Shown one piece after another: positions 2,721 to 55,900 of a stretch of DNA of 64,000 nt. Origin of the DNA: Scyliorhinus canicula (taxonomy: Eukaryota). Numbering within the stretch: position 1 is the stretch's first letter; the number at the start of each line of letters is the position of its first letter. The stretch covers positions 53,498,388-53,562,387 of the forward strand of contig NC_052146.1 in NCBI RefSeq assembly GCF_902713615.1, given 5' to 3'. The position numbers and the translations under genes were made by a program. The notes under the pieces are model-generated. The model made no database searches. It was not told the origin of the DNA and was given only the letters and a program-made list of their open reading frames with translations.

Positions 2721-3070
2721 TGGCAGATCAGTGTCAAGGTGCCCGGGTGACAAGTTACCCATGCCAGAGATTGGGTCCGGGGGCCCTCCCCTTCTGTAGT
2801 GGGGTGAGGGTGTTGAAGGAGCCCCTAATAGGTAAGTTGGGACAGTGGAGGGGGATCCAGAGGCCACGGTGGGGAGTTCGAGGGGGAGCGCGAGATCGGA
2901 GCAGCATTTACAAATGAGCTGGTCAGTACAGGAAGGGAGGAGATTGTGGCCTCGGAGAGACATTCCTCGCTAAGGCCCAAGAAAAACAGAGAGCGGGATA
3001 ATTCTCGACACAGCAGGCAATGAGAAACACCCCGCTCACTCTGGGCAAAATCCTCCGATTGGGAGACTAG

Positions 3071-4249
3071 GGGTCTGGATTCTCCGATTTTGAGGATCCG
3101 GGATGTTTTACGTGGAGAAAAGCAGTGCCGCCCGGATGGGATGAGCAGATCTTGCATTGTGAGGGAGAGGATGGCCCTTGGATGGACTTTGGTAGCAACT
3201 CTCTTAAGGAGTTACCCCCTTGTCCCACTGCAAGGTCCACTGCATCAGAGCCACGCTGGTCAGGACCAGTGGTGTTTCTCACCCAGTTGACTCCCTGCCC
3301 AGAGGACAGGAGAATCATGCAGGCCCAGAGAATATGGAGCCCAGCCTGTGAAGTGGATGCAAATGGGTCATTAAGACCCATTGTATCCTCTCACTGGTGT
3401 GTGGGCGGGAGCAATGATCTGATGTCAGTGGGAGGGGGCCAGTGTATCAGAAATGGATCAGCGCCGGCCGATTTCTCCCCAACGCTGCATTCTCCGCCTG
3501 ATCGGGATTTTGCTACATGAGTGCGGCCTTATCCGGGATCTTGGATTCATGTCGCATTACATTGGTGCCTGTGCTAGCCCATTAGAATGTCCTGAATCGC
3601 TCCAGGACTGGCACTGCTTTCAGGGCCATAGAATCCCGTGATTCAATCCCAGCATCAGCACTTCGGGCGTAATTCTCCGCTCCCGGGAAAAATCGGGAGG
3701 GCTGTGGTGAACTCGGCTGAGTTTAACGATGGCCTCGGAGGCCTCCTTGCCCCCTATTCTCCCCTCCCGGCGTGGCTAGGAGCGGCGCTCCATAACTCTC
3801 GGCCGCGGGGGTATCGGGGGCCGTCTTTCCCCTCAGCCGCCCCGCAAGACGTGGCGGCTTGATCTTGCGGGGCGGTGGAGGGGAAATTGTGCGTCCGATT
3901 TGGACGCCGGCCCAACGATTGGTGGGCACCGATTGCGGGCCTGTCCCCTCCCGAGCACAGTCGTGGTGCTCTTTTCTTGCTAGGCCACCTATAGGCCCCA
4001 AACGGGCTTCTCACTCCCGTTGCATGACGGCAGCGACCAGGTGTGTTTGCCGCTGTCGTGAAACAGCCGCGAACGGCAGGCCGCTCGGCCCATCCGGGTC
4101 GGAGAATCGCCGTTCGCCGTGAAAAACGATTCTTCCGAGCGGGGGGTGGGGGGGAGAATCGCGGGGGGCGCCAGGGGGGGCGTGAAATTTGCCGGGTGGC
4201 CCTCCCGCGAGAATTGCGCCCTTAGTCTCTGCAATGGCAAATCCAGCCC
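3071..4249. mobile_element. PIF/Harbinger-type MITE (outer) hosting a nested MITE
   Basis: Ends GGGTCTGGATTCTCC ... GGCAAATCCAGCCC match the TIR family found throughout the window. Confidence 0.55.
3665..4221. mobile_element. PIF/Harbinger-type MITE (nested, CpG-rich)
   Basis: TIRs GGGCGTAATTCTC / GAGAATTGCGCCC; 3-bp flanks TTC/TTA; internally similar to the 9265-10531 MITE. Confidence 0.85.
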
Positions 4250-6096
4250 ATTATTCTTCTGCTGATCTGTATTGGAGTTAGATCCATATTTTGACAACGT
4301 AATTTTGCCATTTGAATTCTATTTTTTGGCACTTAACCGAATATATTCATTTTGAAGGTATGAGCACTAGAATTTTAAATAATGTCAACAATGATAAGTT
4401 TTCTTGTACAGTGCTGACTATATTTGCACGACAATTGCTGGAAAGTTTGTAGAATTACTGTATCATGTTTAATTTATCCCATTTACATGAACTGGGAAAT
4501 TATATTGGCAGTTAAAAGAGACATTTCGCACAGCAAATTATTTACAATATTTTGTGTTGTAAATTATATTTTGTGCTAACATTTTCACAATTCATTAATT
4601 ACAAAGTATAAATATATACAGTGAATTTTTAAAAAATCATTTTTGGGATGGGGGCACCACTGGGAAGGCTAGCATTGCTGTCTATCCCTAATTACCTGTG
4701 AGAAGTCGTTTTATAAGTTATTTAAAGTTAAGATCATACCTGAAGTATAAATTGTATGGCTTCAATTTAATACAACTCTCACTTTATGCAATGTTCTATG
4801 TGCAGCGTGTACCATCTCAGGGTATAAAAAACCTCAAACAAGCTGAAATGGTGTTTCTTAGCTCACACGTCACCAGCCCACCCTCTTGGTTGGGAAAATT
4901 GTGGTATATGGAAGAAAGAAGAAAAATAAACACAGCCGAGACCAAAACTAAACAGCAGAGTTTCACTCCTCATTTCGAGGTGTTTTAACTATGATTACAA
5001 CATGATAAGTGACCGCCAAAACCAACATCAAAGTGTTATTTTACATTGCATAACGCTCCGAGTAACTTTTGAAGCCAATTTTTCACAATCTGTTTGAAAC
5101 ATTTGGAGGCTTTTGTGACACACAACCAGATGTTCTGGGTTTGGAATAGGAACTGAGAACTATTCCTTCTTTTCGGGGAAGAACTCAGGAACGGAGGCAA
5201 CTTTATGTGGTGAGAGGAAGGGGGGAGGGCCAGAGATGGGGTGGTGCGATGTGAGGAGGGGTGGGGAGGTGAATCCCAATCGTTTCCTTACATGCAGGAT
5301 AAATTGCAGCTACTCTGTTCAATCTAACTTGGGGCTATGTTTGGTGGGAGTTTGAACTCCAATCTGTAGTGTATGAATTTATTGCAGGCGACCTGCTGGG
5401 TTAGTTGACACAAAGACTATCACCACAGTTCTAGCCGTGTTCCGCAAAAGAGTAACATTATGGTCAACCACCTGTGGATCACTTCTCCAAGTATTTCTTG
5501 CTCTTGCAAACCATTTTGTCTTATTTACTGCCACATATTTTGCTTTCTAATCCCAAATAAGGCACAGAATGGTTCAACCATCAGGATTTTCCTTTTACCT
5601 TTGTTTACCTGGAAGAAAGAGGAGAGGATTTGAGGGAGGGTGTGTGGGTCAGTCTGCACTGAAATTGGATCGCACTTGTGTGGAGAGTAGAGAGATGCTC
5701 TGGCAGTCAGTGTTGCCAACAAGAAATGTTGTTGAACCTTTAAGCACCGAAGTACCTCATTAACCTGTTATAGACATAACTGAAGTCTCTGTTGAAGCAA
5801 ATAGTAATGAACTGTCTGTGCCAAATGAGGGCCCCATTATTTCAGTTCCTGTTAACCTCGATCCTATGGAAGCATCTCAGAGAATAGAATTATGCCCCTG
5901 TACCAGAAACAGAAAACCTCCTCAAAAACTTGATTTATAATAATTGAAACTATATATCTTATGGATACAGTGTGTAATTAGAATTCAGGACTAAGCACAA
6001 ATGTAATTATTTCTCCAATTTTGAGCATGTTTTCTATTTGCCTGTATAAAGTCATTTGGTAAATAAGGATTGTAGAAAGGAGTTAAAGGGGAGAGA

Positions 6097-6304
6097 TGTG
6101 GTGATTGTCGTTTAAGACCAGCCTGAATGAATGTGGTCTGGACAATCAATCAACACCTAGCAAGGGGATCTCTGTAAGGGGAGGAGTTTTTCTGGTTAGA
6201 AAGACTGTATTATGGACTAGCTTAAAGCACGCAGCTCATGAAGCAATCTTGTGAAAAAAGTTTGTTTGGTCAACTTAAGAAACCTCTGGGAATACATCTT
6301 CACA
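6097..6304 (+). repeat. Gypsy LTR (208 bp), preceded by PPT and followed by a tRNA-Ser(GCU)-type PBS
   Basis: TGTG...CACA termini; upstream AAAGGGGAGAGA; downstream TGGTGACAAGGA is the CpG-decayed form of TGGCGACGAGGA, complementary to the tRNA-Ser(GCU) 3' end. Confidence 0.8.
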
Positions 6305-7793
6305 TCTGGTGACAAGGAGAAATGATCCTGGCGCTGCCTCGGGCTCCAGACCTGTGAGGCTTGTGTTTCAAACTAAGACTGCAGAAAAAAAAATTCACCA
6401 GAATGTCTCTCTTCAGGTGAATAAATCCATTCCTCCACAGAAGACTGGAGTTAATACATTCAACATCTCAGGATTTATTTTCAGGTAAATTAAATAGGGG
6501 AGGAGGCAAAGCACAAAGCAATTTTTTTGATCATCTATGGAAGTCAGACCTACAATCTTATTTTCAGTCTGACAGCTCCTAGTGTGCCAGGTTCCAAATC
6601 ATTCAGTGAGCTCGCGGACTTAATGGAAATCATTTTCAACCCCAAACTATCAGTCATAATCCAGAGATTCAAATTTAATTTAAGGGTGAATTGATTGCGC
6701 GTACATTGCCATAATAAAGCAACTATCAAAGCATTGTCATTTTGGAGCAAACCTAAATGACATGCTACGGCATTGATTAGTCTGTGCTGTGAGCAATGAT
6801 GCCATGCAGCACCGATTGCTATCAGATGTCAACGTCAATTTCAAATGGGAAATGGCAAGAGCGCTGGTCATGGGGAAAGCATTGAGAAAGATTCACAGGA
6901 GCTGCAGAGTGCACAAAATGGCATTGTATATCAATTATGGTGGGAACCTGCAGCCAGCAACGGCATCGAAACTGCCAGCACAGACGCAAAGTGGGAAACA
7001 TTTCAAGTCACCCACAGAACAAAAAGATATAGTGGAAGAAATTAGACAATGATTCTTAAAGTGAAATGTCACCGATGTGGAAGTAACCACACCCCTGACC
7101 CATATAGGTTTCAGGAAAAAAAAAGTGTCATTATCGTCATAAAAGTGGACATTTGAAAGAACAGTGTAGAGCTAAGTCAATATTGCCGAGTAACCATTCT
7201 GTACCTTATTTGGATTAGGAATGCCAAGTAACCAATCAGCCAAGATGATACAGTTCAACAATGTGAAAGAACCTGACACTGTTTATTCTGATATTCACTC
7301 TCTTTTTAATCTTAAAGCTGTCAAGCCAGACCTTATTACTGTAACGCCCCGTCTCAATGGGAAGACTCTAAGTATGGAAGTGGATATAGTGGCATCAGCC
7401 ATTGTGATAGATGAACACAATTTCAGTACCTGAGAGAGGGTGCCCAACCATTGAACTGGGAGAGCACTGCTGCCAAGTTGAAGACATACATGGGAGAAGT
7501 AATAAAAGTAAAAGGCACCAAAACAGTATTCGGGAGTTATGGGCATCATTCTGCCCATCTCCCTAAATAATAGTGATGGGTGAAGGACCAGGCCTTCTGG
7601 ACCGTGATTGGTTTAAAGAAATCAAGTTAAATTGGTCTGCGATTTTTCAAGTGCGGGCAGGGAGACTGCCGGAGTAGTTAAGAAAGCATGACTGTCTTCC
7701 ATGACAAATTAGACAAAATCAGAGGCTTGCAAGCTATGATTACATTGATACAGAGGCAACTCCTTGATTCTTTAGAGCAAGATCAGATATCAT

Positions 7794-8417
7794 GGGTGGG
7801 ATTCTCTGGTCTCCGACACCGCGTTTGGCGATTGGCCGGGGAATCCCCTTGGGGCCGCAATCGGGGACGGTGCCACTTTTGTGATGCACCGCCCCCTCCA
7901 AAATGGCGCACTCGCAGAGTATGCCGCATGTCCTCGGGACGGCCTTAGGACGTTACCTGAGGCCCTCCACCGAAGCTCCGCCCCCGATCCCCGATGGATC
8001 GAGTTCCCGACGGCGTTGGGCGCGTGTGCTAATTTTTGGGGGGAATCCAGCATGGTGGCTGCGGACTGAGCCCAGCGCGCCACAGTCGGGGGAAGCCAAT
8101 CCACAGACATGGGGGACATTGGCGGGGGCTGGGGTCACTGGTGGGGGATGGCGAGCCTGGCCAAAGGGGGGCACTATTTGGCAGGCCGGGTACGCATGCG
8201 GCTGGTGCCATGTTGCACTGCGCGACCGCTGCAGGCTGCCGCCGTGCGCATGCACGGCCACGGACCCGGCAATTCTCCGGCCATATGCGCATCTAGAGCC
8301 GGGGGCTCTATCCTGCGCGCTTGCTAGCCCCCCCACCAGATGGAGGATCGGTGGAGGTTATGTGCCGTTTTTGCAGGTGTAAAATGCCAATGGCTTCCCA
8401 AATGGAGAATCCAGCCC
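7794..8417. mobile_element. PIF/Harbinger-type MITE inserted in Gypsy pol
   Basis: TIRs GGGTGGGATTCTCT / GGAGAATCCAGCCC; interrupts FFRAR.. | ..AFQEKVNAELSRLE. Confidence 0.85.
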
Positions 8418-8905
8418 ACATGCCTTCCAAGAGAAAGTGAATGCTGAGTTAAGCAGGTTGGAAGAACTCAGCATCGTCCAGTCAGTTCAGTTCTTGGAAT
8501 GAGCAGCATCCATCATTCCTGAAACCGGATAAGATCATCCGTGATGACAGTTAATCAGGCCACAAAGCTGAGTAAGTATCCAATCCTGAGAATTGAAGAC
8601 CTGCTGGCAGGAAGTCAATCTTACACAAAGTTGGATATGAGTCATGCATACCGGCAACTTGAATGAGGTAACACTTCCCAGGGGTATGTCACGATGAACA
8701 CACACAAAGGCCTGCTCCAGTATATCCTGCCTTTTGGTCTGTCTTCGGCATGTGCAGTATTTCAAAGGATGATGGGAAGTCTGTAATTAGGGCAACCATG
8801 GATTGAAGTATTCCTTGACGATAGTCTTATGGCTAAATTGACAGAGACTGAACATCCAGCAAACATAGAAGAGGTGTTAAAGAGATTTCAGGAGACAGGC
8901 TTTTA

Positions 8906-9188
8906 GGGGGGCATGGTGGCACAGTGGTTAACACAGCTGCCTCACAGCTCTAGGGACCTGGGTCAATTCCGGTCTTGGGTGACGGTGTGGAGTTTGCACG
9001 TTCTCCCTGTGTCTACGTGGGTTTCCTCTGGGTGCTTCCTTCCACCATTCAAAGATGTGCGGTTTAGGTGGGATTATGGAGATAGGGTGGGGAAATGGGC
9101 AGAGGCAAGGTGCTCTTTCCGAGGGTTGGTACAGACCCGATTGGCCAAATGGCCTCCTTCTGCACTGTGATAATTCTATGATTCTATG
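8906..9188 (+). mobile_element. HE1-like V-SINE (CR1-type tail) inserted in Gypsy RT
   Basis: tRNA-like head (GGTGGCACAGTGGTTA..GGTCAATTCC), V-core GTGGGTTTCCTC, tail ending TTCTATGATTCTATG. Confidence 0.9.
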
Positions 9189-9264
9189 GAGTCCACTTCA
9201 GCAAAGAGAAGTGTCCTTTACAAGCCACTGAGGTCACCCACCTGAGGCACTTCATAAACACACA

Positions 9265-10531
9265 GGGCACGATTCTCCGATGCCGCACGGCATCGGGAAA
9301 GCCGTCAAGAACTCGGCCGAGTTTCACGACGGCGTTGGAGGCCGCTCCTCGCACCCTGTCTCCCCCCCCCCCCCCAGGGGGCTAGGAGCAGCGTTGTGAG
9401 AAACTCGGCCGCCGGGCTTGCTACAAAGCGGCGCGCCAAGAATGACGCGACGGCGGCGCTTAAGTGACGTCAGCCGTGCACGCGCAGGTTGGCCGGCTCC
9501 AACCCACGCGTGCGCGGTTACCGTCTTCCCCTCCGCTGCCCCACAAGACATGGTGGCTTGATCTTGCGGGGCAGCGGAGGGGAAAGAGTGCGTCTCTTAG
9601 AGATGCCGGGCCGACGATCGGTGGGCACCGATCGCGGGCCAGTCAACTCCCGAGCACGCCCGTGGTGCTTGTTCTTATCTCCACCCCCCACAGGCCACAA
9701 ACTTACCTTTTGATGTGACCATCAGTTGACACGACATGCAGTTGGAAGTGAACAGTGGTTTTAATGATCTTACAATGGAGCCTGCCTGTGCCGAGATGAA
9801 CTGGCAGGCAGGCTCAGACTGCCAGGCTTTATACTTCCGGTTAGTGGGAGGAGCCATGTGCGGAGCCATAGGCGGAGCCAAGTGTGGAGCCCAGTACAAA
9901 CTCCTCATCTCCCCCTAGGGGCAGAGCCACGCAACTGCTCGTATACCAAGCTTACCTGTCTGGCTGTGAGAGTAATCAATCAGAGAGTCTGCATTTTGGG
10001 TGCCCCCTTACCCTTGGGGCCTCTTACCTTCGCGTGGAGTGTTTCATTGTAAGTGAGTCAGTAAGTAATTCATTTGGGTCTGATTGATGAGCATGCCTTA
10101 AAAGTGCCTGAAGGTGTCACACAGAGATCAGCAGCATTGGTGGGTTTACAGTTGGTGGCACCCTGTGCTGATCATTTTTGGTGCAGCTCGCCGCCCCTGC
10201 CCCCTTCTTCCCTCCACCTGCCCCCTTCTTCCCTCCACAGCGAGTAAATCACAGTGTGAATTACACGGACTGTGATTCACCACACCTTTCGCGCTATGTT
10301 CACGCCAGCAGTGACCAGGTGTGGTTGACGCCGGCGTGAACAGGTCGGGAACGGCAGGCCGCTCGACCCATCCGGGCCGGAGAATCGCCGGTCGCCGTGA
10401 AAAACGGCGTGCGGCGATTCCGCGACACGCCATTTTGGGGGGGGGGTGGGAGAATCGCGGGGGGTGCCAGAGCGGCATGTCGTGATTCGCGCGATTCTCC
10501 CACCCCGCGTGGGGAGCGGAGAATCACGCCC
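9265..10531. mobile_element. PIF/Harbinger-type MITE in Gypsy pol, containing a nested solo LTR
   Basis: TIRs GGGCACGATTCTCC / GGAGAATCACGCCC; perfect 3-bp TSD ACA; removing it restores Gypsy INTQGLHTMEEKVK. Confidence 0.92.
9711..10284 (-). mobile_element. Solo LTR with internal foreign (locally templated) patches
   Basis: TG...CA ends (TGATGTGA...TTCACCACA); perfect 5-bp TSD CCTTT at 9706-9710 and 10285-10289; TATA-like GTATAAAG and ATTAAA on the minus strand. Confidence 0.85.
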
Positions 10532-12194
10532 ACAGGGTTACACACCATGGAAGAAAAGGTCAAGGTGATAAAATAGGTGCCTTCTCCTATCAGTTTTGTA
10601 GAATGATAAACTACTGTAGACAGTTTTTACCCAACTTATCGACTTTACTGGTTCCCTTACATATTCTGTTTAACGAAACACCTTTTTTGGTCTTAGAATG
10701 CTCCCCAGGAGGAAGCGTTCAACAAAGAAAAACAATTGCTGCATTCCTCAAACCTGTTAGTACACCTCAACCCATCTAAAGAACAGATAGTGACATACTG
10801 CACCTCTCCATATGGCGTTGCTGAGATGTCGACCCATGACATGAACGACAGCTCTTAAAGAGCGATAGGGTGTGTGTCAAGAAGTTACATGGAAAACACC
10901 TTCCCATTGTTACTGACCACAAATTGCTTTTGGGCCTCTTCAAAGAGGACAAGGCTTTCATACCGATAGCCTCAGCAAGAATTCAACAATGAGCATTAAT
11001 TATGTCTGCCGACAAAAATACTTTCAAACACTGACTTGGGATGCACATAGCGAATGAGGATGGCCATAGCTACTTTCCCTTGTGAGAAAGTGTCACATGT
11101 ACTCTTGTATCCCTAGAAATTGTCTTGACATTAGAGTTTCTGGACACATTAGCAGTCTGTGTGAAGCACATTGGAATCTGGATTTAATGGGAGCTGCAGA
11201 GTTTTTACGTGTACTCAGAAACCCAGGAGTGGTGGGCACTCTTGTTGTGTGACATCTGTGCCTGACCGGAACCCTAGGCTTGGTGGCGGTGAGTAGCTGC
11301 TGGCCTCTGATTGGCCTGGAGATTGGGAATTTCAATACCGGGCGGGGCCATTGGTGGAACTTAACTTGATTTGAGCAGGCTTCCCCCACTGAACCAACAC
11401 ATGCTTCCCCATTGGTTCTCCAACCAGTAGACGAGATCCTTGTCGGCATCACAAAATTCAGCCCTTCAGTGGGAATGTATGTACTGATTCCACATATACA
11501 TCTTCACAAAAATTGCTTCTGCACATTACTTGAGTGATAAACCTGCAGGTCAAGGATGGATTTACAATGAAACACTCCACGCCAAGGTAAGAGGCCCCAA
11601 GGGTAAGGGTGGCACCCAAAATGCAGACTCTCTGATTGATTACTCTCACAGCCAGTCAGGTACAGACATACATGGAAACCCTGCCCACAATTGTAAAATC
11701 AATTCGTATTCTCAACTGAGGGCGGGACTTATCTGATCTGTTGCAGCTTTTGGCTTTGCTCAGGCGCTATGGAGTCATTCATCCATTTGGAACTACATTG
11801 CCCATGCTGCATGTGGCCGAGCATCTGTGCAATGAGAAGCATCAGTATGGAATCAGGCAGATGTAGCCTGTGGTGCCTGATGGGAACTTGAGAATCAGTG
11901 ATCAAGGGTGGCTGTCACATGGACAGGGTTGAATTTGGAGGTGAGCATCTATAAATCCCAGCCCCCAGTGGCAGGGATTAGGATTGCAGACATTTAAAAC
12001 CCCTCAAACCCATCCCCCGCTTCACCCTCCCATTCCCTCTCCTCCACCTGCAATCCCCCCTTCCATTCCCCTTCACAGGAAATGGTGTGTTTCATTGAAA
12101 ATCCACCCATGCATAACCCAAAGGTTATTTGTATATTCTGATTGAAAAAAACGACTATGGCAATGGTCAAGGTCATCATGAATCAATAATGGAA

Positions 12195-12490
12195 AGCAGC
12201 ACGGTGGCACAGTGGTTAGCACTGCTGGCTCAGCACCACGGACCGGGTTCTGTTCCGGCCTTACGTGACTGTGGAGTTTGTACATTCTCCCCGTGTCTAC
12301 GTGGGTTTCCTCCGGGTGCTCCAGTTTCTTCTCACAGTCCAAAGATGTGCAGGTTAGATGATGCTAAATTTCCCTCTAGGGTAGCATTGCCGGAATAGGA
12401 GAGGTGATATTGTCCCTCGGTAGGTGCACACCCAATGGGCCGAATGATCTCCTTCTGCATTTTGGGGGTTCTATGATTTTGGGATTCTAA
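12195..12490 (+). mobile_element. HE1-like V-SINE, diverged
   Basis: GCAGCACGGTGGCACAGTGGTTAGC head, V-core, GGGCCGAATG..TTCTATG tail. Confidence 0.9.
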
Positions 12491-13846
12491 AGTTAATAAA
12501 GTGTAAGCTAACCTCCACTGTAAAGTGAGTACTTTGTCGAAGGTAAATCCCTCAGCGTGATTGAGGGCACCTCACACACATGCTGACAATGTGTTTTGTT
12601 TTCTGTTTGGACAGGAATTCTTCGTGTCATGGTAGGTGAACACACAAAAAAGTGGGAAACATTTAAGCTGTGCAGATTCTACAAAAGCTGTGCCTTGACA
12701 CCCTAAGTTTGAATGAATACGGAGCTTACCTGATGCTTCCTGAGGGTGCAGGTCTCAAGCAGCTGTCAGACGAGGGAGAGAAGGACAATTATGGAGAGAG
12801 TTGTGGCCTTGCAGCGGTAATGAAAACTGCAGGGAAGAGGCTAAATTTCTGACTGAAGATTAATTCAAGAGAATTTGATTACGTCGTGTTGAAAATGGAG
12901 GGGAAACTGGGAAAAAGGTTGACGTGAGACTGGGGATGCTTTGTGGCCTGGTGAGGTGCTGGGGCAAGAGAGAGGGGTGGAATTGAGGGCAGGAAATGAA
13001 AGCATAAACGGGCATAATGCATTTTCTGGAGATATCCAGCTTTGGCTGTCGACAGATCTGTTAACAAGCAGTATATGAAGCACGAGGGATTCAGATCTAT
13101 TTGCAACTTTTATTTCTTACTCATTGGTTTGTCCTGTTTGAATTTGTGGGACTAATGGATTCAACAGTTTTATTTGTAATTTGCAGTTTATAATCCTTGA
13201 AGAGCTGCTGATGCAGTGCCGCCCTTTTGTCTGTGCCCCAATTGGGCAAGAGGATGAGTGAGTGGGATGGGCGAGGCTCGGCTTCAAGTGTAGAACATGA
13301 CAGTGGAATGTTGGAGAGCGCTGAAGGTTTCATTCCTGGGCACATCTTACAGTGCAGCAGTACTCAAGGCAGCAGCACAGCTACTCACTGCACAGCGACA
13401 ATATACACGTGTTTGCACTCGGGAAGTGTACATTATGCTCAGTATTGGAATGTTTTGCAAACAGATAAAACACTGATGTTAAGTGTAATCTTTAATAAAG
13501 GCAAAGGGAGTCAGATGGTGGGAGTATTATTGCTGATTCTTCCTTTTGCCTGTGATTGTTTGCTGATGGGTGGAGGGTGTTGATATGGTTGACAGTGATG
13601 TAGTTTGAATTTGATAAGGGGACTTTAAGAGCCTTACTCACCCCAGTATAATTTCCTATCAATGATGGAGTGTTTTGAAGGATGTCGCCGGACATCCAAG
13701 AGTGGTGGGGTGGCATGAGGGATCGGAAGAGGCCATTCAAAACCCAGTAGGCCATTCGGCCCCTCGAGCCTGCTCTGCCATTTGGTAAAGTCCCGGCTGA
13801 GATCTGCTTGTGTTTCGAATTCCTCGTTTTAAGAAAAAATTGCAGG

Positions 13847-39231: not shown

Positions 39232-40597
39232 GTAAGTCTGGCTCCTCGTGTCATCCGCTGCACCCATTAAAACACTCATAATACCTCCACGGTAATCTCT
39301 CTCCCAGCTACTTCAAAGGTTCCCAACACTTGTCATGGAACCCACTCCACAGTCCCCTTGAGTAGATAATCTGCTTCTCACATCCCTGTTCCCACTCACC
39401 TCCAAGGCAGGCTAGACTTCCTTACCCTCTGACCTCGTAGTACTCCCTTCTATACTCTCCCCACCTGTCTCATTGAAGGACAAACATGAGCACAGCCTGT
39501 TGGTGTCATGTCTGAGCTGAGAACCCTAACGCCATTGGCGAGAGAGCCTTTGAACTGCCCTGTGCAGTGTGAGACTGGCAGCGCTATGTCTCTCCCACCT
39601 TCCACATTGGCGAAGCAGTAATGCTGTGCCGCACCTGGCACGAGCCCCCCAGTACTGCCCACTCCCCCAAATCTCTATCCATCAAAGCTTAGCCATTGTA
39701 GAGTGTCTCTACCTCATCAGTAGGTGGATAAAAACAATGGAACCCCTCACCTCAGAGGAGCAGTAACAGCTGAGGTGTGTCATTCAGCCTTTCTGGGGCC
39801 TAGGATAAGTCCGTTCATTGGCAGGACACATTCAGCTTTCTGTCAGGCAGGAGTCAACATATCGCTCAGGGTGAGAGAAACTTCACTCTGACCTCACTGC
39901 AAATCATCATCATTCTCCTTCAGCTTATAGCCAATTGCTTTAGTGCCCTGCTCATGAACATAGCCACCATCACGATGACCTCCCACAGGCACCCCAGTAG
40001 TGAGTGGATATAAGATCGTATTGTGGGAGAGGTCTTCATACCCTGGTCCTGTTCGTTCCCAAACCGAGAAGCAACAAAGGTGTCCCTAGCTCTGCATACC
40101 ATGTGGGCCCTGGCCATCGTCCAAGGTCCTTCCGCTGCATTCTCTGCATGTTGCCCCTTGCCTCCTCCTTGACCACCTCATTCAAGAAGATTTAACGCTT
40201 CTCCATCTCCCACTGGTCCAGCTGCTCTCCTCACTGCAGTACCAGATTGAGCAGAGTGCAGTAGACCACAATGATGTGGGACATCCTCTGGGAGCTGTAT
40301 TGGAGGACTACCCCAACTGGTCGAGGCACTGGAACTGCGTCTTGAGCAGTCCACTTACCTACTCAACCAGCGCAAGCGCTGATGCATCAGCTACGTTATA
40401 GCGAGTCTCAGCTAGTGTTTGCAGCCTCAGGACTGGCATCATCAGCCACCCCCTGACTGCGTACACTTTTTCCCCAAGGAGCCATCCCAACAGGTGCTTC
40501 TGTCCCTCAAAAATGGCTGGGATCTGTGAGCACCCCAAGATGTAACTATCATGGATACTTCTTGAGAAAGTGGCATACACCTGCATAAGGTATATTG

Positions 40598-41319
40598 CAG
40601 GGGTGGGCAAACTACGGCCCGCGGGCCGCATGCGGCCCGACAAAGGTTTTTATGCGGCCCGCCAATGAGGTGCCCAGAATCATAACCGGCATTTTTGAAA
40701 AGCCGCCGGGGAAAAGCCACTGAAGTAAATGCGCTTATTGAATAAGCGCATTTACTTCAGCGGCTTTTCCCCGGCGGCTTTTCAAAAATGCCGGTTATGA
40801 TTCCGGGCACCTCATTGGCGGGCCGCATAAAAACGCGCGTAGTGGGGTGGATGAGTGGGGCTGTCTCATTGGTCGGTTTAGTTGGGTGTGCGACCAATAG
40901 GAGTCCAGGTTACAAACAATAAGCCTTATTATTGTTTGTAACCTGGACTCCTATTGGTCGCACACCCAACTAAACCGACCAATAAGGCAGCCCCACTCAT
41001 CCACCCCACTACGCGCGTTTTTATCGTTGACTCGGCTAGGCTGTGCTTCTGTCAGTGTTAAGGATCAGCACAAGCAACTTGACACCTGATTTCAACAAAC
41101 TGGTAAATGACTGCAGTCAGATGCATCATTCTCATTGACATTGTTCTGTTACTTACTGAATTACTTTGTTTTTCAAATAAATGTGCTTTTTTTTTTCTTT
41201 AAAGACCTTTTATTTTGGCTATTTAAAATATTAATTATTTTACTTAATATACTATGCGGCCCTTTAAAATTGTGAATTTCTGAATGTGGCCCTTGCACGG
41301 AAAAGTTTGCCAACCCCTG
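40598..41319. mobile_element. hAT (Charlie/Buster-type) MITE containing two long palindromes
   Basis: TIRs CAGGGGTGGGCAAACT / AGTTTGCCAACCCCTG; perfect 8-bp TSD GTATATTG with central TA; subterminal GCGGCCC motifs. Confidence 0.95.
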
Positions 41320-41503
41320 GTATATTGTGTGGTGTCACATGATCTGGACATTGAAGGAGTAGTATCCCTTTTGGTTCATGAATGGCGTACCATGCTGCCA
41401 TGGGAAGCGCAGAGCCACGTGGGTGCAATCGATGACGCACTGTACTGGGCATACCTGCTATGTGGGCAAAGCCCATGGCCCTGGCCTCCTGGGACACCTG
41501 CTC

Positions 41504-44500
41504 CATAAGACCATAAGACATAGGAGCAGAATTAGGCCACTCGGCCCATCGAGTCTGCTCCGCCATTCACTCATGGCTGATATTTTCTCATTAGTCAAGA
41601 ACCTATCTTTCTCTGTCTCTGTCTTAAAGACACTCAGTGATTTGGCCTCCACAATCTTCTGCGGCAAAGAGTTCCACAGATTCACCACCCTCTGGCTGAA
41701 GAAATCCCTCCTCATCCCAGTTTTAAAGGATAGTCCCTTTAGTCTGTTTAGTTTTTCCCACAAGTGGAAACATTCTCTCCACGTCCACTCTATCCAGGGC
41801 TTGCAGTATCCTGTAAGTTTCAATAAGATCCCCCTTCATCCTTCTAAACTCCTAAGGGTGCAAATGCGGAGTCCTCAACCGTTCCTCATACGACAAGTTC
41901 TTCATTCCAGGGATCATGCTTGTGAACCTCCTCTGAACCCTTTCCAAGGCCAGCACATCCTTCCTTAGCTACACGGCTCAAAACTGCTCAAATACTCCAA
42001 ATAGGGTCTGACCAGAGCCTCAGAAGTACATCCCTGGTCTTGTATTCTAGCCCTCTTGACATGAATGCTAACATTGCATTTTCCTTATTAACTGCTGATT
42101 GAACCTGCACATTAACCTTAAGAGAATCATGAACAAGGACTCTCAAGTCCTTTTGTGCTTCTGATTTCCTAAGCATTTCCCCATTTAGAAAATAGTCCAT
42201 GCATAAATTCCGCCTTCCAAAGTGCAAAACCTCACACTTTTCCACATTGTATATAATTTGCCACTTCACGGCCCACTCTCCTAGCTTGTCCAAGTCCCTC
42301 TGCAGCTCCCTTGCTTCCTCAATACTACCTGTCCCTCTCCACAGATCTTTGTATCATCTGCAAACTTAGCAACAGTGCCTTCAGTTCTTCCTTCCAGATC
42401 ATGAATGTATATTGTGAAAAGTTGTGATCCCAGCACAAACACCTGAGGCTCACAACTAGTCACCAGCTCCCATCCTGAAAAAGACCCCTTTTCTGCCCAC
42501 TCTCTGCCTTCTGCCAATAAGCCAATCCTCTATCCATGCCAGGATTTTACCCTTAACACCATGGGCTCTTAACTTATTTAACAGTCTCTATGGCGGCATC
42601 TTGTCAAAGGCTTTCTGGAAATCTAAATAAATCACATCCACTGGTTCTCCTTTGTCTAACTTCTTTGTTACCTCCTCAAAGAACTCTAACAGATTTGTCA
42701 GTCACGATCTCCCTTTGATAAAGCTGTGCTGACCCAGTCCGATTTTAGCATGCACTTCCAAGTACTTTGCAATCTTATCTTTAATAACAAACTTTAAAAT
42801 CTTACCAATGACCAAAGCCAGGCTAACTGGCCTATAATTTCCCGTCTTCTGCCTCCCTCCCTTCTTAAACAGTGGTGTTACATTAGCCACTTTCCAGTCC
42901 TCTGGGACCCTTCCTTCCTCCAGTGATTCTTGAAAGATCACCACCAAAGCCTCCACAATCTCCTCAGTAACTCTTTTAGGACCCTGGGGTGTAGTGCATC
43001 CGGTCCAGGTGACTTATCTACCTTCAGACCTACCTCTGCCCCCTGATTCTCCTGGAGCTCTGGCATCCCACTGGTGTCTTCCACCATGAAGACTGATGCA
43101 AAATAACCATTCAGTTCGTCTGCCATTTCTTTGTTTCCTATTATTACTTCTCCAGCCACGCTTTCCAGTGGTCCAATGTCTATTTTGCCTCTCTTACCTT
43201 TTGTATATTGAAAGAAACTCTTCCTATCTTCTTTTATATTACTAGCTAACTTGCACTCATATTTCATCTTCTCTCCCCTTATTGCTTTTTTCGTTGTCCT
43301 CTGCTCATTTTGAAATGATTTCCAATCCTCTGGCTTCCCACTACTCCTTGCCACTTTGTATGCTTTTCCTTTTGCTTTTATGGTGTCCTTGAGGTCCCTC
43401 GTCAACCATGCCTTGTCCTGCCCTTAACATGTTTCCTCCTCCTTCGGATGAATTTCTGCTGTACCTCCCTAATACCTCCCCAAAACTCCTGCCATTGCTG
43501 TTCCACTGTCTTCCCTGCTAGGCTCCTTTTCCAATCAACTCTGGCCAGCTCCTTCCTCATGTCTTTGTAGTTACCCTTTTTAATTGTAATCCATTACATA
43601 TGATTGTTGCTTCTCCTTCTCAGATTACAGGCTAAATTCTATCATATTCTGGTCACTGCTCCCTAAGGGTTCCTTCACCTTACGTTCCCTAATCAAGTCT
43701 GCCTCATTACACATCACCAAATCAAGAATTCCCTCGTGGGCTCTACCACATGCTGCTCCAAAAAAACATCTCTTAAACATTCCACAAATTCCTTTTCTTG
43801 GGATCCAAAACCCAACCTGATTTTCCCAGTCCCCCCCATTATCTCCTGATTTATTTTTTGCCCCACATCCTGCCTACTGCTAGGGGGCCTGTACATAACT
43901 CCCATCAGGGTCTTTTTACCTTTGCAATTCCTCAACTCTACCCACAGAGATTCTATGCCTTCTGATCCTATATCGCTCCTTGCTATTGATTTAACGTCAT
44001 TCCTTACTAACAATGCAATCCCGCCCCCTTTGCCCATCTGCCTGTCCTTTCGATAGGACACATATCCTTGTATATTTAGATCCCAGCCCTGATCCCCTTG
44101 CAGCCACGTCTCTGTGATGCCCACAACATTGTATCGGCCAATTTCAATGTGCGCAGCAAGCTCATTTACCTTATTCCGTACACTGCATGCATTAAGGTAC
44201 AATACCCTCAGTCCTGCATTGCCCACCTCCCTTCTCACACTTGTCACCTTTTTTGCTCTGCCTGAGGGTGATGTTCTATTATTTTTGTTCTCTATTTCCC
44301 CTTCAGTCATGACACCTTCTAAACTAATGCTCTGGTTCCCACCCCCCTGCTACATTAATTTAAATCCTCCCGAGTGACACTCGCAAACCTCCCAACCAGG
44401 ATATTGGTGCCCCTCGAGTTTAGATGTAACCTGCCCTTCTTGTACAGGTCGCACCTGCCGGGGAAGAGACCCAATGGTCCAGAAATTTGAAACTCTCCCT

Positions 44501-49323: not shown

Positions 49324-50355
49324 AGAACATAGAACATAGAACACTACAGCGCAGTACGGGCCCTTCGGCCCTCGATGTAGCGCCGACCTGTGAAACCATC
49401 TGAAGCCTATCTGACCTACACTATTCCATTTTCATCCATATGTCTATCCAGTGGCCACTTAAATGCCCTTAAAGTTGGCGAGTCTACTACTGTTGCAGGC
49501 AGGGCGTTCCACACCCCTACTACTCTCTGAGTAAAGAAACTGCCTCTGACATCTGTCCTATATCTATCACCCCTCAATTTAAAGCTATGTCCCCTCGTGT
49601 TGGTCATCACAATCCGAGGAAAAAGACTCTCACTGTCCACCCTATCTAACCCTCTGACTATCTTATATGTCTCTATTAAGTCACCTCTCAGCCTTCTCCT
49701 CTCTAACGAAAACAACCTCAATTCCCTGAGCCTTTCCTCGTAAGACCTTCCCTCCATACCAGGCAACATCCTAGTAAATCTCCTCTGAACCCTTTCCAAA
49801 GCTTCCACATCTTTCCTATAATGTGGTGACCAGAACTGCACGCAGTACTCCAGGTGCGGCCACACCAGAGTTATGTACAGCTGCAGCATGACCTTGTGGC
49901 TCCGAAACTCAATCCCTCTGCTGATAAAGGCTAGCACACCATATGCCTTCTTAACAGCCCTATTAACCTGGGTGGCAACTTTCAGGGATTTATGTACCTG
50001 GATGCCGAGATCTCTCTGTTCATCTACACTACCAAGAATCTTGCCATTAGCCCAGTACTCTGCATTCCTGTTACTCCTTCCAAAGTGAACCACCTCACAC
50101 TTTTCCGCATTAAACTCCATCTGCCACCTCTCAGCCCAGCTCTGCAGCTTATCTATGTCCCTCTGTATCCTATAACATCCTTCAGCACTATCCACAACTT
50201 CACCGACCTTCGTGTCATCTGCAAATTTACTAACCCATCCTTCTACACCCTCTTCCAGGTCATTTATATAAATGACAAACATCAGTGGCCCCAAAACAGA
50301 TCCTTGCGGTACACCACTAGTAACTGAACTCCAGGATGAACATTTGCCATCAACC
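49324..50355 (-). mobile_element. 5'-truncated young CR1, same family as 28532-32840
   Basis: Near-identical to 28532-29560; open RT C-terminal frame (GVPQGSVLGP..FADD..) to stop at 49416. Confidence 0.97.
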
Positions 50356-50502
50356 TGTTCTGCTACTCTTCCACCAGTAGGATAGACCCCAAGGAATTTC
50401 TGATCATCACATAAGCTCTGAGATTGCTTAGACTTCCAAGAACCCAACGGTAGTTGACAAGTCAAATTGAAATTAACAATGGGGATTCAATTTGAAATTG
50501 AA

Positions 50503-52991: not shown

Positions 52992-55900
52992 AATGGAGGA
53001 CGGTTCGCAGCTGGGAGGGTTCCTAGCCTGGGGAGGAAGGGAGGGGGGGGAAGGGGAATACCGGGTTGCTGCTGGTAGGGTCAGGAAGGAGCTAGTGGGG
53101 GCCGGGGGGACAGAGGTGAGGTGTTGTCGCTGTGGGGACTGGGTCGGGCAGGGGGTGCTGGCCTGGGGCTGGCAGTCGACGGGCTATGGCTAGTCGACGG
53201 GGGAGGGGGGCGGGACGCCCTCTGATCCGGTTGGTCACCTGGAATGCGAGAGGGTTGAATTGGCCGGTGAAGCGGTCGAGGATACTTGCTCATCTGAAGG
53301 GGCTAAAGGCAGATGTGGCAATGCTTCAGGAGATCCACCTGAAGGTGGCGGACCAGGTCCGCCTGAGGAAGGGATGGGTGGGGCAGGTTTTCCACTCTGG
53401 GTTGGATGTGAAGAACCGGGGAGTGGCGATTCTGGTGGGGAAAAATGTGTTGTTTGAGGCATCAGAGGTGGTAGGTATGTTATGGTTAGGGGCAGGCAAC
53501 AAGGAGAGAAAGTGGTACTTGCTAGTGTGAATGCCCCAAATTGGGACGATGCGGGCTTTATGATGCGTATGTTGGGACGGGTCCCGGATCTGGAGACGGG
53601 AGGTCTGATCATGGGGGGGACTTTAATATGGTGTTGGATCCTTCACTGGATCAGTCCAGCTCTAGGACGGGTAGGAGGCCGGCGGCGGCCAAGGTACTGA
53701 GAGGGTTTATGGACCAGATGGGTGGGGTGGATCCATGGAGGTTTGTGAGGCCGAGGGCATGCGAGTACTCTTTCTTCTCCCACGTACATAGGGTCTACTC
53801 TCGGATAGACTTCTTCGTGGTGAGTAGGGGACTGATTCCGAGAGTGGAGGAGGCCGAGTTTTCGGCCATTGCAATCTCCGACCATGCGCCGCATTGGATG
53901 GAGTTGGAGATGGGGGAGGTGCGGGACCAGCGCCCGTTGTGGCGGTTGGATGTGGGGTTGTTGGCGGAGGAGGAGGTGTGTAGGAGGGTCCGGGCAAGTA
54001 TTGAGGGGTACCTCGAGGTGAATGATACGGGGGAGGTTCAGGTGGGCATGGTCTGGGAAGCCCTGAAGGCAGTGGTTCGTGGGGAGCTGATATCCATCCG
54101 GGCACACAGGGAGAGGAGTGAGAGGGATAGACTGGTGGGAAAGATGCTGGAGGTGAACAGGAGGTATGCAGAGGCACCAGAGGAGGGACTGTTGGGGGAG
54201 AGGCACAGCCTGCAGGCTAAATTTGATTTGCTGGCCACTGGAAAGGCGGAGGCACAGTGGAGGAAGGCACAAGGGGCAGTGTACGAACATGGTGAAAAGG
54301 CGAGTAGGATGCTGGCTCATCAGCTCCGCAAGCGGGATGCGGCTAAGGAAATTGCTGGAGTGAGAGACAAGAGTGGGAATGTGGTGCGGAAGGGGGTAGA
54401 GGTGAATGAGGTCTTCAAGGACTTTTACGGGGAACTGTACCGGTCGGAGCCAACGGGGTAGAGGAAGGAAATGGAGAGGTTCCTCAACGGGCTTTCTTTC
54501 CCGAAGGTGCAGGAGGAGAAGGTGGAGGGGTTGGGTGCGCCGATTGAGCTGGAGGAGCTAGTTAAGGGGATCGGGCAGATGCAGTCAGGGAAGGCACCGG
54601 GGCCGGATGGGTTCCCGGTGGAATTTTATAAAAAGTTTGTGGACCTAGTGGGCCCCTTGCTGGTGCGAACACTCAATGAAGCGTGGGAAGGGGGGACTTT
54701 GCCCCCGACGATGTCGCGGGCGCTGATCTCGTTAATTTTAAAGAGGGACAAGGACCCCCAGCAGTGTGGTTCATACAGGCCCATATCTCTCCTCAACGTG
54801 GATGCTAAGGTGCTGGCAAAAATCCTGGCCACCAGGATAGAGGACTGTGTGCCAGGGGTGGTGCACGAGGACCAGACAGGTTTTGTGAAGGGAAGGCAAC
54901 TGAACACGAATGTGCGGAGATTGTTGAATGTCATCATGATGCCGGCGATTGAGGGGGAGGCAGAGATAGTGGTGGCGCTGGATGCGGAGAAGGCCTTCGA
55001 TAGAGTGGAGTGGGGGTACCTATGGGAGGTGTTGGGGAGGTTTGGATTTGGTGAAGGGTTCATTAGATGGGAAGGCTGCTATATGAGGCCCCGATGGCAT
55101 GCGTGGCCACAAATAGGAGGAGGTCGGAGTACTTCCGGCTTTACCGAGGGACCAGGCAGGGTTGCCCCTTGTCCCCCTTGTTGTTTGCACTGGCAATCGA
55201 GCCGCTGGCGATGGTGTTGAAGGATTCAGAGAGGTGGAGAGGCTTGGTGCGAGGTGGGGAGGAACATAGGGTGTCGTTGTATGCCGATGACCTGTTACTG
55301 TATGTGGCGGACCCGGTGGGAGGGATGCCGGGGGTGATGGAGTTGCTAGCTGAGTTTGGGACCTTTTCAGGTTATAAATTAAATTTAGGCAAGAGTGAGG
55401 TGTTTGTGGTGCACCCTGGAGACTAGGAGGAAGGAATTGGTAGGCTCCCACTTAGGCGGGCAGGGGAGAGCTTTAGGTACCTGGGGGTGCAGGTGGCCAG
55501 GGACTGGGGGACTCTTCACAAGCATAATTTCACCAGACTTGTAGATCAGATGGAGGAGGAGTTCAAGAGGTGGGACATGCTGCCATTATCGTTGGCGGGG
55601 AGGGTACAGTCCGTCAAAATGACGGTGCTTCCGAGGTTCTTGTTCCTCTTTCAGTGCCTGCCCATCTTTATCTCCAGGGCCTTCTTTAGGAGAGTGACTA
55701 GCAGTATTTTGAGCTTTGTGTGGGCACATGGGACTCCGAGAGTGAAGAGGGTGTTCCTGGAGCGAGGGAGTGATAGAGGCGGGCTAGCGCTGCCCAACCT
55801 TCTGGGGTACTATTGGGCGGCCAATGTGTCAATGGTGCATAAATGGGTGATGGAGGGGGGAGGGGCAGCGTGGAAAAGAATGGAGATGGCGTCATGTAGA

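What the first reader, a model, noticed from the sequence alone, without database searches (positions are those of the whole stretch)
40647..41024. hAT MITE whose interior is two abutting near-perfect palindromes (T-shaped fold)
Seen: palindrome 1 has 93-bp arms (40647-40739 and 40741-40833), a 1-nt loop and 2 mismatches, both at CpG. Palindrome 2 has 96-bp arms (40827-40922 and 40929-41024), a 6-nt loop and 2 mismatches. They overlap at ATAAAAA, and both centres use the same motif in opposite arrangement (GCTTATT-G-AATAAGC and AATAAG-C-CTTATT). Closed by the TIRs, the single strand folds into a T shape, geometrically like an AAV ITR (analogy only). Known: spacerless palindromes of this length extrude cruciforms and are unstable. 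Inference: built by a coupled fold-back/template-switch event at the CTTATT motif. If it is a family trait, the structure may aid transposition or be maintained by arm-to-arm conversion, and it could yield hairpin RNAs.
Basis: partly seen in the sequence, partly recalled or inferred. Interest (0 to 1): 0.7.

Follow-up and report, generated by a model that had tools for sequence, protein, structure and literature searches.

The report
Double palindrome inside a shark transposon
A small cut-and-paste (hAT) transposon in a catshark genome really contains two adjoining, almost perfect 190-base palindromes; they are inherited by what looks like a few hundred sister copies and are most likely an outsized repair scar left when another transposon cut itself out, with no sign of a function.

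Summary
A 722-bp hAT-type MITE (40598-41319) has 16-nt inverted ends and a perfect 8-bp target duplication, GTATATTG. It holds two abutting palindromes: arms of 94 nt around G40740, and arms of about 97 nt around C40924. They overlap by 8 nt, ATAAAAAC.

This is not an assembly artefact and not a one-off. Read contigs from two DNA samples of this species and from a second species cover the interior far above single-copy depth. Diverged contigs bridge the junction between the palindromes.

The scan found the same structure before on other DNA of this genome: four other copies are noted, and one was followed up with the same reading. I could not verify those notes here.

Most likely origin (about 55%) is a giant hAT excision footprint made once in the subfamily's founder:
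- both centres are single-base apexes;
- the inner arm ends carry a direct GCTTATT duplication, 7 of 8 positions of a hAT target duplication;
- the two unfolded flanks are joined at an 8-nt microhomology.

The arms are about five times the longest such footprint arm I found reported (20 nt).

Nothing supports a role in transposition, since the palindrome-free short form is far more abundant. Arm-to-arm conversion is not needed either: this copy is young and carries a private arm mismatch. RNA output is untested.

The parts
40590..40597 (.). Left copy of the 8-bp target-site duplication, GTATATTG
   Evidence: Identical 8-mer on both sides of the element
40598..41319 (+). The whole non-autonomous hAT element (MITE), 722 bp
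   Evidence: Inverted ends plus 8-bp duplication. ORFs within the element are at most 46 aa; longer ones overlapping its edges run out into the flanks.
40598..40613 (+). Left terminal inverted repeat, CAGGGGTGGGCAAACT
   Evidence: 15 of 16 positions match the reverse complement of the right end
41304..41319 (+). Right terminal inverted repeat, AGTTTGCCAACCCCTG
40598..40689 (+). Left part shared with the far more abundant short form of the MITE
   Evidence: Contig joints 40686-40689 to 41232 with 6-9 filler bases, in organism A runs X1, X3 and X10 (tables 5 and 5c)
40622..40639 (.). 18-bp perfect palindrome CGGGCCGCATGCGGCCCG in the left subterminal region. TGCGGCCC recurs at 40631, 40653 and 41255 (+) and at 40623 and 40820 (-).
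40646..40739 (+). Palindrome 1, left arm. Its first 44 nt are ordinary subterminal MITE sequence.
   Evidence: the overlap with the short-form part comes
40740..40740 (+). Single-base apex (G) of palindrome 1
40741..40834 (+). Palindrome 1, right arm (inverted copy of 40646-40739)
40733..40739 (+). GCTTATT: inferred left copy of the inner 8-bp target duplication (7 bases kept; the 8th is represented by the apex)
   Evidence: Sequence and simulation
40827..40834 (+). ATAAAAAC: 8-nt overlap of the two palindromes, read as the microhomology at which the two unfolded flanks were joined
   Evidence: Its complement GTTTTTAT stands at 40646-40653 and 41017-41024. The two flanks share an 8-mer by chance in 18% of shuffles.
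40827..40923 (+). Palindrome 2, left arm (inverted copy of the right arm, lacking one ATT)
40924..40924 (+). Single-base apex (C) of palindrome 2 in the 1-nt-loop reading
40925..41024 (+). Palindrome 2, right arm. It begins with CTTATT (inferred right copy of the inner target duplication) and carries 3 extra bases (ATT slip).
41025..41319 (+). Non-palindromic, AT-rich right part. 41232-41319 is shared with the short form.
41320..41327 (.). Right copy of the target-site duplication, GTATATTG

Best explanation
The stretch is one young copy of a subfamily of a non-autonomous hAT transposon in a catshark genome. I estimate the subfamily at a few hundred copies, but that figure is rough. The element has no gene of its own. 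It would be moved in trans by a hAT transposase that recognises its inverted ends and subterminal TGCGGCCC motifs; this step is inferred.

The double palindrome was not made at this locus. It was inherited from the subfamily's founder; this is shown indirectly, by reads and by other copies noted in the scan.

In the founder it most likely arose once, as an oversized hAT excision footprint (inferred):
1. A second hAT element had inserted inside the founder at GCTTATTG, duplicating those 8 bp.
2. When it excised, the transposase left both flanks closed as DNA hairpins with a single-base tip, as hAT chemistry does.
3. Instead of being nicked a few bases from the tip, each hairpin was opened about 95 nt away and unfolded. 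Each flank thereby became a palindrome of about 190 bp.
4. The two unfolded ends were joined where they happened to share 8 complementary bases (ATAAAAAC / GTTTTTAT).

The scarred element stayed mobile and multiplied. The palindromes are best seen as a passenger scar without a shown function. When transcribed they would form long RNA hairpins, and as single-stranded DNA they would form a three-way fold, but neither is shown to matter.
For: hAT MITE identity:
- 15/16-matching CAG...CTG ends, a perfect 8-bp duplication GTATATTG, and only short ORFs.

Family trait, not an artefact:
- Summed contig depth over the interior is about 2,700-13,000 in X1 and 435-2,100 in X3. Flank contigs have depths of about 3-6. 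Organism B shows 86-430 (tables 2 and 8).
- Contigs with 7-8 differences bridge the junction between the palindromes (X1 record 5, 40774-40869; X10 record 10, 40767-40861).
- Other contigs bridge the right edge of palindrome 2 (X1 record 6, X3 record 18).
- Four further copies with the same 376-379-base double palindrome are noted on other pieces of this genome. Those notes were not verified here.

Secondary origin:
- The left arm of palindrome 1 includes 44 nt of ordinary subterminal MITE sequence that the short form also has (joints). Its mirror copy must therefore be a later inverted duplication.

Footprint signature:
- Both centres are odd palindromes with a 1-nt apex.
- The 7 bases before the first apex (GCTTATT) equal the complement of the second apex plus the 6 bases after it. 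The chance of that is about 6e-5.
- Published Ac/Ds footprints are palindromic insertions centred on the complement of the base next to the transposon, mostly joined at microhomologies (PMC5873905).
- A step-by-step simulation of insertion at GCTTATTG, excision, unfolding and joining at ATAAAAAC reproduces the 722-bp element. The exceptions are the four arm mismatches, a 3-nt slip and, under one opening geometry, one apex base.

Youth of this copy:
- The target duplication is perfect, CpG observed/expected is 0.84-1.17 in the palindromes, and only about 3-4 positions differ from all read contigs (40719, 41160, 41225, 41187).
Against: - The inner target duplication is 7 of 8, not 8 of 8, under the canonical chemistry with both hairpins opened on the 3' side. 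The first apex is G where C is predicted. A full fit needs one hairpin unfolded from the other side, or a later change at the centre.
- A 3-nt ATT difference between the arms at the second centre also has to be a later slip.
- No progenitor with a single GCTTATTG, and no copy still holding the inner element, was seen. None of the 15 joints shown has that form, but 55 joints were not shown.
- Arms of 94-97 nt are about five times the longest footprint arm I found reported (20 nt, quoted in PMC5873905).
- The copy number and the presence of the palindrome centres in other copies rest on summed contig depth, which the tool says is not a copy number, and on unverified scan notes. Short-read contigs cannot span the centres.
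Confidence: 0.55

Rival explanations
1. The palindromes come from a transposase-independent break or replication error in the founder. Either both ends of a double-strand break folded back and were extended, or a replication fork switched templates three times: at the two CTTATT/AATAAG sites and at ATAAAAAC.
For: - The layout A-X-X'-A'-Y-Y'-A, with the middle piece equal to the reverse complement of Y'-A-X, can be written as three template switches.
- Fold-back priming at breaks is an established route to inverted duplications (PMC10622511).
- The 8-nt microhomology at the junction fits any microhomology-mediated joining.
- The 7-of-8 inner duplication, rather than 8 of 8, weakens the transposon reading.
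Against: - Fold-back priming needs a native short inverted repeat and leaves its spacer at the centre: 6 and 35 bp in the cases read. Here both centres have a 1-nt apex, which cannot form by base-paired snap-back unless the founder already held 13-19-bp palindromes at both sites.
- There is no microhomology at either turn-around point (sequence).
- This model does not predict a 7-8-bp direct duplication at the inner arm ends, which is the hallmark of a staggered transposon insertion.
Confidence: 0.25
2. An inverted, circularly permuted copy of the element's own interior was inserted into itself. For example, a small circle excised between the two GTTTTTAT repeats re-entered at the X|Y' border. 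Alternatively, a tandem duplication was followed by inversion of its middle.
For: The middle segment 40741-40923 is exactly the reverse complement of the junction that a circle or tandem dimer of the unit would have.
Against: It needs several independent rare steps that land at the same 8-bp site. It predicts neither single-base apexes nor their G/C mirror relation. The hairpin-unfolding model produces the same permuted layout in one repair event.
Confidence: 0.07
3. Whatever its origin, the double palindrome is kept because it does something. It might help transposase binding or transposition, be kept symmetrical by arm-to-arm gene conversion, or yield regulatory hairpin RNAs.
For: - The scarred form did multiply, and it is present in two species.
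- The mirror arm adds an extra inverted TGCGGCCC subterminal motif at 40820.
- The arms would form long perfect RNA hairpins.
- Contigs of runs guessed to be RNA cover the interior (X10).
Against: - The palindrome-free short form is far more abundant. Depth at the shared ends is 100,000-435,000 against thousands for the interior in X1.
- The arm mismatch at 40719 is private to this copy and uncorrected. The number of arm mismatches is what a copy with about 0.5% private changes would have, so no conversion is needed.
- Rfam matches are all below the gathering scores.
- The RNA label of X10 is a guess, and intronic copies would appear in RNA anyway.
Confidence: 0.08
4. The palindromes are a sequencing or assembly fold-back artefact at this locus.
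For: Long-read chimeras can create palindromes. No contig listed spans either centre or links the unique flanks to the interior.
Against: - The same structure is noted at four other loci.
- Independent short-read samples and a second species hold the arm sequences and the junction between the palindromes.
- The arms differ at CpG sites in the way real mutations do.
- A 0-mismatch contig ends exactly at both arm borders, 40834-40922, as a de Bruijn graph does at a true palindrome (record 11).
Confidence: 0.02

Closest known systems
hAT excision footprints (Ac/Ds, Tam3, hobo, Hermes, TcBuster): flank hairpins, P-nucleotides, microhomology joining
   Same: - Both target-duplication copies are kept.
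- The inverted repeats are centred on a single base at the former transposon border.
- The two sides are joined at a microhomology.
This matches the description in PMC5873905 and PMC3499496. The layout is reproduced by simulating that chemistry.
   Different: - Arms are 94-97 nt on both sides, against 1-3 nt usually and 20 nt at most in the yeast data quoted in PMC5873905.
- One apex base is the complement of the canonical prediction.
- The scar lies inside another transposon and was then copied many times.
Tam3-induced inverted duplications in Antirrhinum (nivea locus)
   Same: A hAT element causes inverted duplications of flanking DNA (cited in PMC3744419 and PMC9909510). From memory, and not checked here, the niv-525 allele carries an inverted duplication of about 200 bp that arose at a Tam3 site.
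   Different: Those are single alleles in a gene, some large-scale and ascribed to aberrant transposition. I could not read the original papers, so centre structure and arm lengths were not compared.
Ordinary hAT MITEs (from memory, the MER5-type ends of vertebrate hAT-Charlie elements)
   Same: 8-bp duplication, CAGGGGTG... ends, short size, high copy number, no coding capacity. The short form seen in the reads, about 190 bp, is a typical MITE.
   Different: This subfamily has a 542-bp interior with two internal side-by-side palindromes. The resemblance to MER5 is recalled, not tested; no repeat library was available.
Fold-back inverted duplications at double-strand breaks
   Same: An inverted duplication starting at a break, with arms made by copying the flank (PMC10622511).
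   Different: Those start at native inverted repeats and keep a spacer of 6-35 bp. Here the apexes are single bases and the inner arm ends carry a target-site-like direct duplication.
AAV inverted terminal repeat (T-shaped hairpin)
   Same: Two small adjoining palindromes enclosed by an outer stem in the single-strand fold.
   Different: This is a geometric analogy only. The structure is internal, not terminal. hAT transposition uses double-stranded DNA. There is no Rep-type site and no replication role.

Membership tests
hAT superfamily, non-autonomous element (MITE) | 8-bp target-site duplication | tested here: met
   GTATATTG at 40590-40597 and 41320-41327
hAT superfamily, non-autonomous element (MITE) | Short terminal inverted repeats of CAG...CTG type | tested here: met
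   15 of 16 terminal bases complementary
hAT superfamily, non-autonomous element (MITE) | Small, non-coding, multi-copy | tested here: met
   722 bp. ORFs within the element are at most 46 aa. Contig depth is far above the flanks in four runs.
hAT superfamily, non-autonomous element (MITE) | A matching autonomous element with a hAT transposase sharing the ends | not testable with these tools
   There is no hAT transposase in the window; the only ORFs with a Pfam match there are LINE fragments. The rest of the genome is not searchable here.
hAT excision footprint | Both copies of the 8-bp target duplication flank the scar | tested here: inconclusive
   7 of 8 positions agree under canonical chemistry. 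8 of 8 agree if one hairpin was unfolded from the 5' side.
hAT excision footprint | Palindromic insertions centred on the complement of the base next to the transposon (PMC5873905) | tested here: inconclusive
   Both centres are single-base apexes. The second apex (C) is the complement of the predicted G. The first apex (G) is not the complement of the predicted 8th base.
hAT excision footprint | Joint at a microhomology | tested here: met
   8-nt overlap ATAAAAAC at 40827-40834, with its complement at both outer edges
hAT excision footprint | Short arms (a few nt; 20 nt at most reported) | tested here: not met
   Arms are 94 and about 97 nt, against 20 nt (PMC5873905)
hAT excision footprint | A donor with the element still inserted, or an unscarred empty site | not testable with these tools
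   The genome is not searchable. The single read-laying run listed no such joint among the 15 shown; 55 were not shown.
Foldback (FB-type) transposon | Long terminal inverted repeats making up most of the element | tested here: not met
   The ends pair over only 16 nt. The palindromes are internal and lie side by side.
microRNA precursor families (Rfam) | Score at or above the family's gathering threshold | tested here: not met
   The best match is MIR1888 at 60.5 bits against 72. All matches are sub-threshold and hit both strands, as any perfect hairpin would.

The most novel reading that the evidence does not exclude
The double palindrome is a germ-line hAT excision footprint in which both hairpin-capped flanks were unfolded about 95 nt from their tips. 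That is roughly five times the longest footprint arm I found reported. The scarred element then transposed many times and persists in two catshark species. If so, the family is a natural record showing two things: vertebrate hairpin-capped breaks can be opened far from the tip, and near-spacerless 190-bp palindromes are both transposable and stably inherited in a vertebrate genome.
Probability: 0.5. Interest if true: 0.55.

Novelty: new variant of a known kind. Interest (0 to 1): 0.42.

Why it matters
If the footprint reading holds, it extends what is known about the repair of transposase-made (and, by kinship, RAG-type) DNA hairpins. It would mean they can be unfolded about 100 nt from the tip in a vertebrate germ line.

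It would also supply many dated natural replicates of long, almost spacerless palindromes. On these one could measure palindrome stability, centre mutations, arm-to-arm conversion and hairpin-RNA output.

If the reading fails, this is simply a rearranged MITE subfamily of local interest.

Tried and rejected
- A second copy in the window: none. blastn of the element against the window gives only self and arm-to-arm hits, and the TIR pattern matches once.
- Scanning metagenome contigs for a CpG-free 20-mer of the second arm: 0 hits. The prokaryote genome, phage and plasmid collections were not tried, being irrelevant to a shark repeat.
- The search of earlier findings by sequence: blank.
- Rfam: only sub-threshold microRNA hairpin look-alikes, rejected as family membership.
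- Tandem repeats around the element: none.
- Confirming the exact Hermes nicking position from the primary papers: the Hermes structure papers, Yu et al. 2004 and Martin et al. 1988 are not held. I relied on the statement in PMC5873905.
- niv-525 is not in the library, so the Tam3 precedent stays a recollection.
- Alternative inner target words: GCTTATTA fits worse than GCTTATTG. GCTTATTC fits about as well as canonical GCTTATTG: it matches both apexes but needs a substitution at 40931 and a 3-nt indel. Only GCTTATTG with the left hairpin opened from the 5' side leaves just the arm mismatches and the 3-nt slip.
- A reading in which the apex comes from the transposon's own end base was rejected. 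It gives no target duplication and would need unequal end bases.

Full report
**1. What is there**

The sequence at 40400-41700 holds a 722-bp element, 40598-41319.
- Its ends are CAGGGGTGGGCAAACT and AGTTTGCCAACCCCTG, complementary at 15 of 16 positions.
- It is flanked by a perfect 8-bp direct repeat, GTATATTG. This is the hallmark of a hAT-superfamily insertion.
- ORFs lying within it are at most 46 aa.

The repeat finder confirms both palindromes:
- Palindrome 1 has arms 40646-40739 and 40741-40834: 94 nt, 98% complementary, 1 nt between them.
- Palindrome 2 has arms 40827-40922 and 40929-41024: 96 nt, 98% complementary, 6 nt between them.

A base-by-base walk shows the following.
- The two mismatches in palindrome 1 are CpG against CpA (40719/40761 and 40676/40804).
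- The two mismatches in palindrome 2 are transitions away from CpG (40864/40987 and 40867/40984).
- Palindrome 2 can also be read as a single-base apex (C40924) with one extra ATT in the right arm.
- The palindromes overlap by 8 nt, ATAAAAAC (40827-40834). Its complement GTTTTTAT stands at the outer edge of each palindrome (40646 and 41017).

The layout is therefore A-X-X'-A'-Y-Y'-A. As single-stranded DNA the element folds into two long side-by-side hairpins closed by the terminal stem. The energy is -280.5 kcal/mol, z = -42 against shuffles.

**2. Surroundings**

There is no second copy in the window and no tandem repeat nearby. Among the larger ORFs I scanned within about 10 kb on either side, and all ORFs of 200 aa or more in the window, the only Pfam matches are LINE endonuclease and reverse-transcriptase fragments. 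No hAT transposase is present. The element sits in repeat-rich, apparently non-coding DNA. Earlier notes of the scan identify the genome as a catshark.

**3. One-off, artefact or family trait?**

Contigs of four public runs were laid on 40200-41700 at 85% likeness or better.

Depth:
- Contigs confined to the flanks have depths of about 3-6 (records 1, 8, 17, 21).
- Summed depth over the palindromic interior is about 2,700-13,000 in X1 and 435-2,100 in X3. These are two samples of organism A.
- It is 86-430 in X8, a second species.
- The tool warns that summed depth is not a copy number, so I read this only as 'many copies, probably hundreds'.

Contigs:
- Contigs that differ from the window at 7-8 positions bridge the junction between the palindromes (X1 record 5, 40774-40869; X10 record 10, 40767-40861).
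- Others bridge the right edge of palindrome 2 (X1 record 6; X3 record 18). Diverged sister copies therefore share the arrangement.
- A 0-mismatch contig ends exactly at both borders of one arm (40834-40922, record 11). A de Bruijn graph does this at a true palindrome.

Scan notes:
- The scan's own notes list four more copies with a 376-379-base double palindrome on other pieces of this genome: s1-243477, s1-213924, s1-249354 and s1-286470.
- That makes five copies in about 86 Mb read so far, again pointing to hundreds genome-wide. I could not check these notes. They are leads that agree with the read data.

An assembly artefact and a single-locus rearrangement are both very unlikely.

**4. 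Relation to the rest of the MITE family**

The reads show joints from 40686-40689 to 41232 with 6-9 filler bases such as GTGAAG, in organism A runs X1, X3 and X10 (tables 5 and 5c). These are a short form of about 190 bp that shares only 40598-40689 and 41232-41319 with this element.

Depth over those shared ends is 100,000-435,000 in X1, far above the interior. Two things follow.
- The left arm of palindrome 1 contains 44 nt of ordinary subterminal MITE sequence, so its mirror image is a secondary inverted duplication.
- The palindrome-bearing form is a small minority, so nothing suggests that the palindromes promote transposition.

**5. Age, and the arm-to-arm question**

At 40719 every contig in all four runs reads G where the window has A (table 3). 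That arm mismatch is a private CpG-type change in this copy and has not been corrected against the other arm.

Only about three other positions in the element differ from all, or nearly all, contigs (41160, 41225 and a 2-nt gap at 41187). CpG observed/expected is 0.84-1.17 in the palindromes. The copy is young.

With roughly 0.5% private change, one or two arm mismatches are expected without any gene conversion. The two mismatches in palindrome 2 show no alternative letters in the reads, so they may already have been in the founder.

**6. How the palindromes were made**

Three features constrain the mechanism.
- (a) Both centres are odd palindromes turning on a single base, G and C.
- (b) The seven bases before the first apex (GCTTATT) equal the complement of the second apex followed by the six bases after it (G + CTTATT). 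The chance of that is about 6e-5.
- (c) The two palindromes are fused through an 8-nt word whose complement lies at both outer edges.

hAT transposases excise by leaving covalently closed hairpins on the flanking DNA (PMC6900584; PMC4763223). [quoted passage not shown] The maximal arm reported is 20 nt, in yeast (PMC5873905).

I simulated that pathway. The steps were:
1. insertion of a second element at GCTTATTG inside a palindrome-free long form;
2. excision with single-base-tip flank hairpins;
3. unfolding of both hairpins;
4. joining at ATAAAAAC.

The product equals the observed 722 bp apart from:
- the four arm mismatches;
- the 3-nt ATT slip;
- if both hairpins are opened on the 3' side, the first apex (C predicted, G seen).

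If the left hairpin is unfolded from a nick on its 5' side by strand-displacement synthesis, the apex also fits. The inner target duplication is then 8 of 8.

A shared 8-mer between the two flanks arises by chance in 18% of shuffles. The joining microhomology therefore needs no special explanation.

I put this reading at about 55%. Its weak points are:
- the 7-of-8 fit under the canonical geometry;
- the unprecedented arm length;
- the lack of a progenitor or an occupied site, which I could not search for.

An earlier follow-up on a sister copy (s1-243477) reached the same reading. That is not independent evidence, but my own simulation and literature check agree with it.

**7. Rivals**

However, it needs native inverted repeats and leaves their spacer: 6 and 35 bp in PMC10622511. 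A 1-nt apex with no microhomology at the turn, plus a target-site-like duplication, fits it poorly unless the founder already had short palindromes at both sites (about 25%).

Self-insertion of a permuted circle, or a tandem duplication followed by inversion, needs more steps (about 7%).

A maintained function is not excluded, but no result here supports it (about 8%):
- Rfam gives only sub-threshold microRNA hairpin matches on both strands.
- The 'RNA' label of run X10 is a guess.

An assembly artefact is at about 2%.

**8. Comparison with known things**

The element is a member of the hAT MITE kind. The target duplication, the ends, the size, the lack of coding capacity and the high copy number were all tested and met. 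A matching transposase was not testable.

Its ends resemble the MER5-type ends of vertebrate hAT-Charlie MITEs. That is from memory only, because no repeat library was available.

As an excision footprint it meets the microhomology criterion and partly meets the apex and target-duplication criteria. It fails the usual size range.

It is not a foldback transposon, because the palindromes are internal. The AAV-ITR likeness is geometry only.

Tam3 is cited as inducing inverted duplications of flanking DNA. I recall, unverified, an allele (niv-525) with an inverted duplication of about 200 bp. If that is right, the arm length is less unprecedented than the yeast figure suggests.

**9. Limits**

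- Read laying and the look-up of sequencing runs allow one call each, and both were used.
- A metagenome pattern scan was blank.
- The rest of the genome could not be searched. The subfamily consensus, the progenitor and the exact copy number therefore remain open.

**10. Verdict**

This is a real, family-wide double palindrome inside a young hAT MITE. It is most likely a giant excision scar that hitch-hiked as the element multiplied. It is a new variant of a known kind. It is of moderate interest to people who study transposons and hairpin repair, and has no shown function.

Noticed in passing
window:41475-41700: Just right of the element lies a repeat with enormous summed contig depth: up to about 1.5 million in X1, against about 5 for single-copy contigs. 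It is also very deep in the second species. It is presumably one of the most abundant SINE/LINE-tail repeats of this shark.
   Followed up: no
window:40622-40639: An 18-bp perfect palindrome, CGGGCCGCATGCGGCCCG, lies in the left subterminal part of the MITE. TGCGGCCC recurs three times direct and twice inverted in the element. These are candidate transposase-binding subterminal motifs. The core resembles, but is not identical to, the GCGCATGCGC module noted elsewhere in this genome (s1-237858).
   Followed up: partly
window:40662-40983: Six CCAAT boxes lie in the palindromic interior (+ at 40662, 40894, 40979; - at 40814, 40868, 40953). Within each arm of palindrome 2, an inverted pair ATTGGTCG / CGACCAAT starts 23 bp apart (40868 and 40891), a spacing reminiscent of paired NF-Y sites. 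No test of binding or promoter activity was possible.
   Followed up: no
window:40240-41456: In run X10 only (guessed to be RNA), single contigs join 40240 to 41456, 40559 to 41447 and 40450 to 40523. The skipped ends are non-canonical and the content between them is unknown. They may come from related repeat copies that lack the MITE rather than from splicing. The flanks at 40404-40556 are themselves moderately repeated, so the MITE probably landed in an older repeat.
   Followed up: no
window:29723-31183, 43714-44310, 49416-50465, 53541-55220: LINE fragments with apurinic-type endonuclease and reverse-transcriptase domains lie on both strands around the element. No hAT transposase ORF is present anywhere in the window.
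   Followed up: partly
window:41187-41225: The AT-rich right part of the element differs from the read consensus by a 2-nt length change in the T-run (41187) and by A for T at 41225. A sister copy is reported as 702 bp against 722 bp here, so this part seems length-variable between copies.
   Followed up: no
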